Shown here piece by piece: positions 54,060 to 56,276 of a stretch of 64,000 nt of DNA. Origin of the DNA: Lepidodermella squamata (lineage: Eukaryota > Animalia > Gastrotricha); NCBI GenBank assembly GCA_047495785.1, contig JBLDXI010000002.1, forward strand, positions 1,860,001 through 1,924,000, read 5' to 3'. Under the pieces are notes generated by a model. That model was not told the origin of the DNA, searched no databases, and saw nothing but the letters and a program-made list of their open reading frames with translations. A program made the position numbers and the translations under genes. Every line of letters begins with the position of its first letter. The stretch's first letter is position 1.

Positions 54060-55330
54060 ACGTTGGCGTTGAACGTCGCAATTGAACTCCCCTGCAAGCA
54101 TCTGGACGATTTTGAAGTGTCCATTTTCAGCAGCAATAGACAACGGCGTCGAGCCATCCGTATCAGGGGCATTAACGTCGCAATTGAACTCCCCTGCAAG
54201 CATTCTGACGGTCTCCTCGTGACCATTTTGGGCAGCAAAGTGCAAAGGTGTCCAGCCATCATTCTCTGGGGCATTAATGTCGCAATTGAACTCCCCTGCA
54301 AGCATCTGGACGATTTTGAAGTGTCCATTTTCAGCAGCAATAGACAATGGCGTCGAGCCATCCGTATCAGGGGCATTAACGTCGCAATTGAACTCCCCTG
54401 CAAGCATTCTGACGGTCTCCTCGTGACCATTTTGGGCAGCAAAGTGCAAAGGTGTCCAGCCATCCTTCTCTGGGGCATTAATGTCGCAATTGAACTCCCC
54501 TGCAAGCATCTGGACGATTTTGAAGTGTCCATTTTCAGCAGCAATAGACAATGGCGTCGAGCCATCCGTATCAGGGGCATTAACGTCGCAATTGAACTCC
54601 CCTGCAAGCATTCTGACGGTCTCCTCGTGACCATTTTGGGCAGCAAAGTGCAAAGGTGTCCAGCCATCCTTCTCAGGGGCATTAACGTGGCAATTGAACT
54701 CCCCTGCAAGCATTCTGACGGTCTCCTCGTGACCATTTTGGGCAGCAAAGTGCAAAGGTGTCAGGCCATCCTTCTCAGGGGCATTAACGTCGCAATTGAA
54801 CTCCCCTGCAAGCATTCGGACGATCTCCTTGTGTCCATTTTCAGCAGCAATAGACAATGGCGTCGAGCCATCCGTATCAGGGGCATTAACGTCGCAATTG
54901 AACTCCCCTGCAAGCATTCTGACGGTCTCCTCGTGACCATTTTGGGCAGCAAAGTGCAAAGGTGTCCAGCCATCCTTCTCAGGGGCATTAACGTGGCAGT
55001 TGAACTCCCCTGCAAGCATTCGGACGATCTCCTTGCGTCCACGTAGGGCAGCAATGTGCAAAGGTGTCAGGCCATCCTTCTCAGGGGCATTAACGTGGCA
55101 GTTGAACTCCCCTGCAAGCATTCGGACGATCTCCTTGCGTCCACGTAGGGCAGCAATGTGCAAAGGTGTCAGGCCATCCTTCTCAGGGGCATTAACGTCG
55201 CAATTGAACTCCCCTGCAAGCATTCTGACGGTCTCCACGTGTCCCTTTTGGGCAGCAAAGTGCAACGGTGTCCAGCCATCCTTCTCTGGGGTATTAACGT
55301 GGCAGTTGAACTCCCTTGCAAGCATTTTAA
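54060..55330 (-). repeat. Highly homogenised 102-bp (34-aa) ankyrin tandem array with a 204-bp higher-order unit
   Basis: Near-identical units ...MLAGEFNCDVNAP...; WTPLHFAAQNGHEETVR and STPLSIAAENGHFKIVQ units alternate. Confidence 0.95.
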
Positions 55331-56276
55331 CGATTTCAGTGTGTCCCTTTTCAGTAGCTATGTGTATTGCTGTCCGGCCATTATCCGCAGGTGTATTTAC
55401 GTCGCTGTTGAAATCGTTTGCTAGCATCTTCACAATATCAACGGATCCAGTCATGGCTGCGAGATGCAAGGGGGTGTATCCCATCTCCATGGTAGTCTTC
55501 ACATTAATGTATGTTTTTGCAAGAAGCTTAACCACTTCGGCTTGACTCTCCATAGCTGCGACATGCAACAAAGTCATATTGCGTTCATCCCGCTTTTGCA
55601 CCTTTGCCTTCATCACACCCGCTAATAGTTTTACAACCTTAGCATGGCCGTTCTTGACTGCCGCCCAAATTGGGGTCTCGTCATTGATTGTTGCAGTATC
55701 GATGCTTTCGTTTGAAACCGTTCCCAGGGTTTCGACCGTACGCAGATTGCCGCTGTTCGCAGCTATGTAAATAGGAGTTCTCCCCAATAGGTCTTTCGAC
55801 AGCGGATTGGCATTGAACTTCTTTACTAATAGTTTTGCGATCTCATCATGTCCTTCTTGCGCAGCTAGAAACAACGGGGTCACGCCATCGCTGCTCTCGC
55901 AGTTAACGTTTATTTTCAAAGCTGTGGTTGATAACAGCGATTCGATTTCCTCGATTTTGTTTAGCCTGATAAGGCGAAAAAGCAGCTAAATAAAATGATA
56001 ATATGTTAATACCTGATCTAGGACAATTGCGCCTTACTTTTTCACCAGCGCTCAGGTCCGGAACTGCAAGATTTCCATCGGAAGCAGTTTTCATTAGCTG
56101 ATTGGCGATTTGGTCTTCTGTTAACGAATTATCCGTTGCGTTAAGCAAAGCTAGAGGCGAGACGCGCCTCGAGCTGGTTTTTTCACGAATCATCCCCATG
56201 ATCGCGTTTCGGAATTTAAATGAATAACCGCGGGAATCATCAAAGTCTTTTGGCTGATTGCTATACATATATGTAA

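What the first reader, a model, noticed from the sequence alone, without database searches (positions are those of the whole stretch)
54060..55450. Ankyrin array that shuffles like a natural DARPin library
N-cap repeats 1-4 and the C-cap are orthologous between copies, but the internal repeats differ in number (~19 vs ~21 total) and identity. The 34-aa scaffold (MLAGEFNCDVNAP..DG.TPL..AA..G) is fixed while variation concentrates in the hairpin and first helix (EK/DT, W/L/S, HF/HI/SI, QN/LR/EN), the usual ankyrin binding face. Copy 2 has exact unit duplications, a 204-bp AB dimer repeated three times, and chimeric units (STPLSIAAENGH+KEIVR; LTPLHF), all within one exon. This is the signature of unequal crossover generating new specificities, as in fungal NLRs with high internal repeat conservation.
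Basis: partly seen in the sequence, partly recalled or inferred. Interest (0 to 1): 0.75.

Follow-up and report, generated by a model that had tools for sequence, protein, structure and literature searches.

The report
Recently expanded ankyrin array, broken gene
One copy of a duplicated invertebrate kinase-ankyrin gene has very recently multiplied and reshuffled its 102-base ankyrin units, but that copy has two reading-frame breaks and its variable positions show no selection for change, so it looks like ordinary repeat instability in a dying gene copy, not a working diversity generator.

Summary
The sequence observation holds. On the minus strand, 54054-55277 holds 12 in-register 102-nt ankyrin units of three types. 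Four units are identical, two more are identical to each other, a 204-nt two-unit block occurs three times, and two units are mosaics. The paralogue at 41045-43132 has no such near-identical units.

Two things were missed. A 13-nt out-of-register junction (54064-54076), absent from five paralogues, stops the array frame at 54057-54059 and leaves the conserved C-terminal cap (53678-54067) in another frame. The kinase-1 catalytic exon has a 1-nt deletion (A-run 58925-58930). That deletion also occurs in a second locus, so it is not a sequencing error. Two dispersed repeats have also landed in this duplicated block.

The unit types are old lineages (dS about 0.5-0.6 between type B and the others) that were amplified recently. 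Codon tests on 147 units from eight paralogues find no excess of amino-acid change: omega is 0.6-1.0 at the classical binding-face positions and 0.34 on the scaffold.

Unit shuffling by misaligned recombination is therefore supported. A selected "natural DARPin library" is not supported for this array. One intact-looking paralogue (C2:1217212-1221336) shows the same recent unit amplification, so a family-level version stays open. Other agents of this scan have already reported on the gene family; none has reported on this array.

The parts
54054..55277 (-). Recently amplified part of the copy-2 ankyrin array: units 7-18, 102 nt each, of types A (units 10, 13, 15, 17), B (14, 16, 18) and C (8, 9), plus unit 7 (A-like) and the mosaics 11 and 12
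   Evidence: Register and mismatch matrix; variable-column table; TRF
54054..54665 (-). Three successive 204-nt AB blocks (units 13-18); the last B unit runs into the frameshift junction
54666..54869 (-). Mosaic units 11 (B head, C middle, unit-7-like tail) and 12 (C head, A middle, C tail)
54972..55175 (-). Two identical type-C units (8 and 9)
54064..54076 (-). 13-nt insertion, an out-of-register join of unit nt 84 to unit nt 72. It is specific to copy 2 and shifts the frame. Its placement is ambiguous by 5 nt because ACGTT flanks it on both sides
   Evidence: Sequence; alignment with five paralogues
54057..54059 (-). Premature stop codon that ends the array frame
53678..54067 (-). Last ankyrin repeats and conserved C-terminal cap, open but in a different frame from the array
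   Evidence: 79% identical to the copy-1 cap
55278..55985 (-). N-terminal part of the ankyrin exon: cap, units 1-4 (counterparts of copy 1) and the diverged units 5-6
58733..58980 (-). Kinase-1 catalytic exon of copy 2. A 1-nt deletion in the A-run 58925-58930 (A6 where paralogues have 7 bases) gives a stop at 58909-58911
57394..57639 (-). Kinase-2 exon (catalytically dead: HRA and GFG motifs) of copy 2; no lesion seen
56272..57086 (.). 815-nt dispersed repeat inserted in the intron between the kinase-2 and ankyrin exons of copy 2; absent from copy 1
41045..43132 (-). Ankyrin exon of copy 1: intact, cap in frame, no near-identical units

Best explanation
Copy 2 (53678-60642, minus strand) is a decaying tandem paralogue of a lineage-specific gene family. 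The family encodes kinase, dead kinase and a long ankyrin array.

Its internal ankyrin units have very recently been duplicated and recombined by misaligned exchange between 102-nt units. This could be unequal sister-chromatid or homologue exchange, gene conversion, or replication slippage. The events took three pre-existing unit types and made a run of identical units, a thrice-repeated two-unit block and two mosaics. One further exchange was out of register by 13 nt. It cut the array off from its conserved C-terminal cap.

Shown:
- the repeat anatomy
- the two frame breaks relative to paralogues
- the age contrast between old unit types and young copies
- the lack of excess nonsynonymous change

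Inferred:
- the copy makes no normal protein
- the amplification is a neutral by-product of repeat instability, not a selected change of binding specificity
For: Array anatomy:
- Identical and near-identical units and mosaics are present.
- The copy-2 units have no close kin in seven other arrays (at least 16/102 differences), so the amplification is intragenic.
- Types A and B differ at dS 0.59 with omega 0.34, whereas their copies differ by 0-1 nt.

Frame breaks:
- The 13-nt insertion is seen only in copy 2 and is followed by a stop.
- The 1-nt deletion in kinase 1 is absent from seven paralogue copies. It is shared with a kinase-only fragment at C2:1225500-1227800, so it is real.

Other decay in the block:
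- Two dispersed repeats are inserted in the copy-2 block, one of them in the coding exon of the neighbouring gene.
- Four of eight close paralogues have broken ankyrin exons (W2, L009, L014, L013), a birth-and-death pattern.

Selection tests:
- Overall omega is 0.53-0.55, face codons 0.64-1.0 and scaffold 0.34. No codon is significantly above 1.
- Young pairs (1-6 nt apart) show 54 nonsynonymous to 19 synonymous differences against a neutral share of 0.78 (p 0.48).
Against: - The caps of copy 2 show omega 0.21-0.33 against intact members, no higher than intact-versus-intact comparisons. The ankyrin exon was therefore constrained for most of its history, and its break must be recent.
- The kinase-1 exons of the two copies that share the frameshift differ with omega 0.18. 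This is unexpected for two long-dead copies. It needs gene conversion from intact paralogues or parallel deletions in the A-run.
- No RNA data were available.
- An intact-looking paralogue (L012) shows the same kind of recent amplification, so amplification is not confined to dead genes.
- My codon tests are counting methods on 102-nt units with recombination. They have low power against episodic selection.
Confidence: 0.6

Rival explanations
1. One reading: the array is a working, selected diversity generator. Unit shuffling creates new binding surfaces on a fixed scaffold, as in fungal NLRs whose repeats show high internal conservation.
For: [quoted passage not shown]
- The most variable codons across the family (2, 10, 11, 31, 33, 34, plus 7, 14 and 32) include all six DARPin-randomised positions.
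- Unit number varies from 7 to 39 between paralogues.
- The intact-looking L012 gene also has recently amplified blocks.
Against: - Copy 2 has two frame breaks.
- There is no excess of nonsynonymous change at face codons or at any single codon.
- The variability pattern is the generic one for ankyrin repeats; to my knowledge it is how the DARPin positions were chosen.
- Variation in copy 2 also sits in helix 2.
- No NOD module is present.
- Strong recent amplification is found in only 2 of about 24 arrays.
Confidence: 0.12
2. Copy 2 still makes a product, for example dead kinase plus ankyrin array from a downstream start and without the normal cap. Alternatively, the lesions are carried by only one haplotype. 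In either case the array could still be under selection or drift as a functional gene.
For: - Cap omega is low, 0.21-0.33.
- The frame stays open for 642 codons across the array and for 129 codons in the cap.
- The kinase-2 exon has no lesion.
Against: - The C-terminal cap is conserved in at least 20 family loci. To my knowledge, ankyrin arrays without a cap are usually unstable.
- Dispersed repeats have inserted in the block.
- No second haplotype copy of this array exists in the assembly.
Confidence: 0.15
3. The run of identical units, the 13-nt junction, or both, are artefacts of whole-genome amplification or assembly. The assembly statistics fit the Lepidodermella squamata genome, which was built from multiple-displacement-amplified DNA, and that method makes template-switch chimeras.
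For: - The genome is 121.2 Mb in 151 contigs, with window GC about 0.44. The published assembly is 122 Mb in 157 contigs with GC 43%, from MDA plus HiFi (PMC11660948).
- That paper cites up to one chimera per 10 kb for MDA.
- The junction uses short microhomology.
Against: - The paper reports HiFi reads averaging 13 kb at 83x coverage and found no chimeric contig. A 1.2-kb array is easily spanned by such reads.
- Units 14, 16 and 18 differ by single bases and the mosaics are complex, which argues for some age.
- A second locus (L012) shows the same phenomenon.
- The kinase-1 deletion is present at two loci.
Confidence: 0.08

Closest known systems
Repeat arrays with high internal conservation (ANK, TPR, WD) in fungal NOD-like receptors (Dyrka et al. 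2014, PMC4986451; Paoletti/Chevanne work cited there)
   Same: Near-identical tandem ankyrin units, unit reshuffling within a gene, repeat-number differences between related genes, and membership of a large fast-turnover gene family.
   Different: - The attached domains here are two kinase domains, not NACHT or NB-ARC.
- No positive selection was detected at face positions.
- This particular gene is frame-broken.
- Polymorphism between individuals is untested.
- The host is an animal. That paper reports only 0.8% of metazoan ANK/TPR/WD repeats as highly conserved internally.
General post-duplication evolution of protein repeats (Persi et al. 2016, PMC5120217; title and abstract seen)
   Same: Recently duplicated repeats within one protein evolve under strongly relaxed constraint. 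Here omega is about 0.8 in young pairs against 0.34 on the scaffold overall.
   Different: That study covers intact proteins across many taxa. Here the best example sits in a likely pseudogene.
Designed ankyrin repeat proteins (DARPins)
   Same: Same fold: PDB sequence matches to DARPins and ankyrin-R/B at E 1e-50 to 1e-104. The consensus-like scaffold is conserved, and the least conserved positions coincide with the randomised ones.
   Different: - The unit is 34 aa, not 33, with a conserved Cys at unit position 26.
- Natural variation also affects helix 2.
- There is no evidence that variants were selected for binding.
Animal kinases with C-terminal ankyrin repeats (RIPK4/ANKK1 type); recalled from my own knowledge, not tested here
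   Same: A kinase domain followed by an ankyrin array in one soluble protein.
   Different: This family has a second, catalytically dead kinase domain and 16-39 repeats.

Membership tests
Ankyrin repeat (Pfam PF00023 / PF12796) | Tandem units of about 33 aa with the TPLH helix-turn-helix and hairpin motif, matching the Pfam models above the gathering score | tested here: met
   Ank 472 bits, Ank_2 481 bits for copy 2; ankyrin-R/B, NOMPC and DARPin chains
Repeat array with high internal conservation (fungal NLR type) | Over 85% identity between repeats across at least 100 aa | tested here: met
   At a 68-aa offset, units 13-16 against units 15-18 are about 94% identical over 136 aa. At a one-unit offset, A versus B is only 68%
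Repeat array with high internal conservation (fungal NLR type) | Positive diversifying selection at positions of the binding surface | tested here: not met
   face codons omega 0.64-1.0; no codon has a significant excess. These are counting methods of limited power
Repeat array with high internal conservation (fungal NLR type) | Repeat-number polymorphism between individuals | not testable with these tools
   The assembly is a single one. Between paralogues, unit number ranges from 7 to 39. The 98.4%-identical pair L013/L015 has equal unit numbers
Repeat array with high internal conservation (fungal NLR type) | Repeat domain attached to a NOD/STAND nucleotide-binding module | tested here: not met
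   The upstream exons are protein kinase domains. No NACHT or NB-ARC module was seen in the pieces scanned
DARPin-like library | Variation restricted to the six surface positions on an otherwise fixed scaffold | tested here: not met
   In units 7-18, 14 codons vary. Only 4 are face positions and 5 lie in helix 2. The enrichment is not significant (p about 0.17)
Duplicated (unprocessed) pseudogene | Frame-disrupting lesions relative to intact paralogues | tested here: met
   13-nt insertion plus stop; 1-nt deletion plus stop in kinase 1
Duplicated (unprocessed) pseudogene | Relaxed constraint (omega near 1) on its lineage | tested here: inconclusive
   Cap omega is 0.21-0.33 and kinase-1 omega 0.18-0.5. 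This fits a recent death or gene conversion. Young array units show omega of about 0.8
Duplicated (unprocessed) pseudogene | No functional transcript or protein | not testable with these tools

The most novel reading that the evidence does not exclude
The family as a whole could be an animal recognition repertoire that diversifies by unit shuffling in its ankyrin arrays, a counterpart of the fungal NLRs with highly conserved internal repeats. On this reading, copy 2 is a recent casualty of the same instability and the intact-looking 38-unit gene at C2:1217212-1221336 is a working example. The family comprises kinase, dead kinase and ankyrin array, with at least 20 loci carrying a strongly matching cap and 7-39 units per array.
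Probability: 0.15. Interest if true: 0.7.

Novelty: new member of a known kind. Interest (0 to 1): 0.3.

Why it matters
If the family-level reading were right, it would be a rare animal example of receptor-like diversification by shuffling of ankyrin repeats. It would also be testable with amplicon sequencing across individuals.

As it stands, the array is a clean natural record of how a repeat array grows. It shows one-unit and two-unit duplications, mosaics, and an out-of-register event that destroys the gene. It is also a caution: near-identical repeats and a variable "binding face" are not evidence of selection.

Tried and rejected
- Regular-expression cutting of units failed. It was replaced by scoring against a unit consensus.
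- A lineage-specific "singleton codon" count gave too few events to use. It was replaced by pairwise Nei-Gojobori estimates.
- I looked for a second haplotype or an allelic contig of the copy-2 array. None exists; the next best match is 79% identical.
- I tested for recent exchange with other paralogues. None was found; the nearest foreign unit differs at 16 or more of 102 nt.
- For the neighbour gene at 37598-38557: no Pfam match even at E up to 10, no PDB sequence match, and a single-sequence AlphaFold model with pLDDT 32 that was unusable, so no fold search was run. Only Atlas feature hits point to lectin plus ETX/MTX2-aerolysin clusters.
- I did not run the large protein searches, because no claim here rests on absence of relatives.
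- I did not build a joined spliced model. Exons were handled one at a time by reference, and the two frames of the copy-2 ankyrin exon were searched as separate pieces.

Full report
**Setting**

The window is G000:C2:1860001-1924000 of a 121.2-Mb eukaryotic assembly in 151 contigs. Size, contig number and GC (window about 0.44) fit the published Lepidodermella squamata assembly: 122 Mb, 157 contigs, GC 43%, built from multiple-displacement-amplified DNA and HiFi reads (PMC11660948). I could not verify the species directly.

A block of about 9.5 kb is duplicated in tandem: 37396-46841 and 50974-60661. Flanks and introns are 88-94% identical, but the interior of the ankyrin exon is only about 75% identical. 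Each block carries, on the minus strand:
- a 319-aa gene of unknown family
- a gene with an active-looking kinase domain, a dead kinase domain (HRA and GFG motifs) and one large ankyrin exon

I call the ankyrin genes copy 1 (W1, ankyrin exon 41045-43132) and copy 2 (W2, 53678-55985).

**The observation**

Pfam confirms ankyrin repeats in both exons. PDB sequence matches are to ankyrin-R/B, NOMPC and DARPins.

Cut in register, copy 2 has 18 units before a stop. At the DNA level:
- Units 10, 13, 15 and 17 are identical.
- Units 8 and 9 are identical.
- Units 14 and 16 differ by 1 nt.
- Copy-1 units differ from each other by 18-46 of 102 nt.

There are three unit types, A, B and C. The AB pair (204 nt) occurs three times in a row. 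Units 11 and 12 are mosaics whose breakpoints are visible in the table of variable columns. Internal units of the two copies have no one-to-one counterparts. The N-terminal four repeats and the C-terminal cap do (nucleotide identity 87%, dS 0.24 and 0.37).

1. Frameshift at the end of the array.
   - The array frame of copy 2 ends at a stop at 54057-54059.
   - The conserved last repeats and cap (53678-54067) are open only in another frame.
   - An alignment with five paralogues shows a 13-nt insertion that only copy 2 has.
   - It is a join of unit nucleotide 84 to unit nucleotide 72, an out-of-register exchange or deletion inside the array.

2. Frameshift in kinase 1.
   - The catalytic exon of copy 2 has six A's at 58925-58930 where seven other paralogue copies keep the frame with one more base.
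   - This gives a stop at 58909-58911.
   - The same deletion, together with shared substitutions, is present in a kinase-only gene fragment at C2:1225500-1227800. That fragment also has a stop and a 7-nt insertion. The deletion is therefore not a sequencing error.

3. Dispersed repeats in the copy-2 block.
   - An 815-nt repeat sits in the intron before the ankyrin exon.
   - An 841-nt repeat sits in the coding exon of the neighbouring gene.
   - Each has dozens of 88-95% identical copies elsewhere in the genome.

**Age and origin of the units**

Types A and B differ at dS 0.59 (omega 0.34), B and C at dS 0.50 (omega 0.46), and A and C at dS 0.17 (omega 0.96). Their copies differ by 0-1 nt. 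The amino-acid differences between types are therefore old. What is recent is copying and recombination.

No unit of copy 2 has a close relative in seven other arrays (at least 16 differences), so the amplification is intragenic.

**Selection**

I cut 147 units from eight close paralogues. The most variable codons of the 34-aa unit, numbered from the G of GxTPLH, are 2, 32, 10, 33, 31, 7, 34, 14 and 11. These include all six DARPin-randomised positions. To my knowledge this is the generic variability pattern of ankyrin repeats, so it does not discriminate between hypotheses.

| Test | Result |
|---|---|
| 63 phylogenetically independent nearest pairs, all codons | omega 0.55 |
| Same pairs, six a-priori face codons | omega 0.94 |
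| Same pairs, the 25 codons outside the nine most variable | omega 0.34 |
| Tree-based parsimony count, all eight arrays or the four intact ones | no codon with significant excess of nonsynonymous change; face omega 0.64-1.0 |
| Young pairs (1-6 nt apart) | 54 nonsynonymous to 19 synonymous; neutral share 0.78; p 0.48 |

The variable sites look unconstrained, not positively selected. These are counting methods on short recombining units, so absence of evidence is all I claim.

**Is copy 2 dead?**

Two independent frame breaks and two repeat insertions in the block say yes. Against a long death:
- The caps of copy 2 show omega 0.21-0.33, like intact members.
- The two copies that share the kinase-1 deletion differ in kinase 1 with omega 0.18.

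The break at the array must therefore be recent. The kinase-1 pattern needs gene conversion from intact paralogues or parallel deletions in the A-run. I leave this unexplained.

Half of the eight close paralogues have broken ankyrin exons:
- W2
- L009, with a frameshift and truncation
- L014, with two stops
- L013, with its C-terminus replaced

This is a birth-and-death family.

**The family**

- The C-terminal cap matches 53 places in the genome, about 21 of them at E below 1e-27.
- In about 24 arrays the unit number ranges from 7 to 39.
- Strong recent unit duplication is found only in copy 2 (9 of 15 units within 5 nt of another) and in the gene at C2:1217212-1221336 (19 of 35 units).
- There are traces in three other arrays.
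- The C2:1217212-1221336 gene has its cap in frame, and I saw no lesion in its five largest kinase pieces. I did not check its other exons.
- The pair L013/L015, 98.4% identical over 6 kb, has equal unit numbers.

**Verdict**

The anatomy is real and is a textbook record of misaligned exchange in a repeat array, including an out-of-register event that broke the gene. The idea of a selected natural binder library is not supported for this array. A family-level version remains possible but unproven.

Noticed in passing
window 37598-38557 (-); copy at 51182-51748 and 52327-52992: A 319-aa gene is duplicated together with the kinase-ankyrin gene. It has no Pfam or PDB sequence match. Protein-atlas feature hits (0.94) point to hemolytic-lectin / ETX-MTX2 / aerolysin-type clusters, which is a lead only. 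The second copy is split by an 841-nt dispersed repeat at 51591-52431. The genome holds only about 3-4 paralogues.
   Followed up: partly
L019:5500-7800 (G000:C2:1225500-1227800): A kinase-only gene fragment lies just upstream of the 38-unit ankyrin gene. It shares copy 2's 1-nt deletion in kinase 1 and also carries a stop and a 7-nt insertion. Even so, kinase-1 omega between it and copy 2 is 0.18, which is unexplained (gene conversion?).
   Followed up: partly
L012:4212-8336 (G000:C2:1217212-1221336): An intact-looking paralogue has at least 35 ankyrin units (38 or more by eye), including a three-unit block repeated three times. It is the best candidate for testing repeat-number polymorphism in a working gene.
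   Followed up: partly
window 56272-57086 and 51591-52431: Two short dispersed repeat families (815 and 841 nt). Each has dozens of copies at 88-95% identity on many contigs. They are probably non-autonomous mobile elements.
   Followed up: partly
L013 (G000:C32:105001-115000) and L015 (G000:C7:2295001-2305000): Two family members on different contigs are 98.4% identical over 6 kb and have the same number of units. In L013, identity ends inside the C-terminal cap and the end of the protein is replaced.
   Followed up: partly
window 43937-44799 and 57394-58276: The exons of the dead kinase domain show omega 0.5-1.0 in all paralogue comparisons, against about 0.2 for kinase 1 in most comparisons. 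The dead domain is much less constrained.
   Followed up: no
unit codon 26 in all arrays: A cysteine replaces the usual alanine of the GADVNA loop in 122 of 147 units. Earlier notes of this scan describe many other ankyrin-fusion families in this genome (347 notes mention ankyrin).
   Followed up: no
window 31609-31841: An 81-nt tandem repeat of 2.8 copies at 74% matches. Not examined.
   Followed up: no
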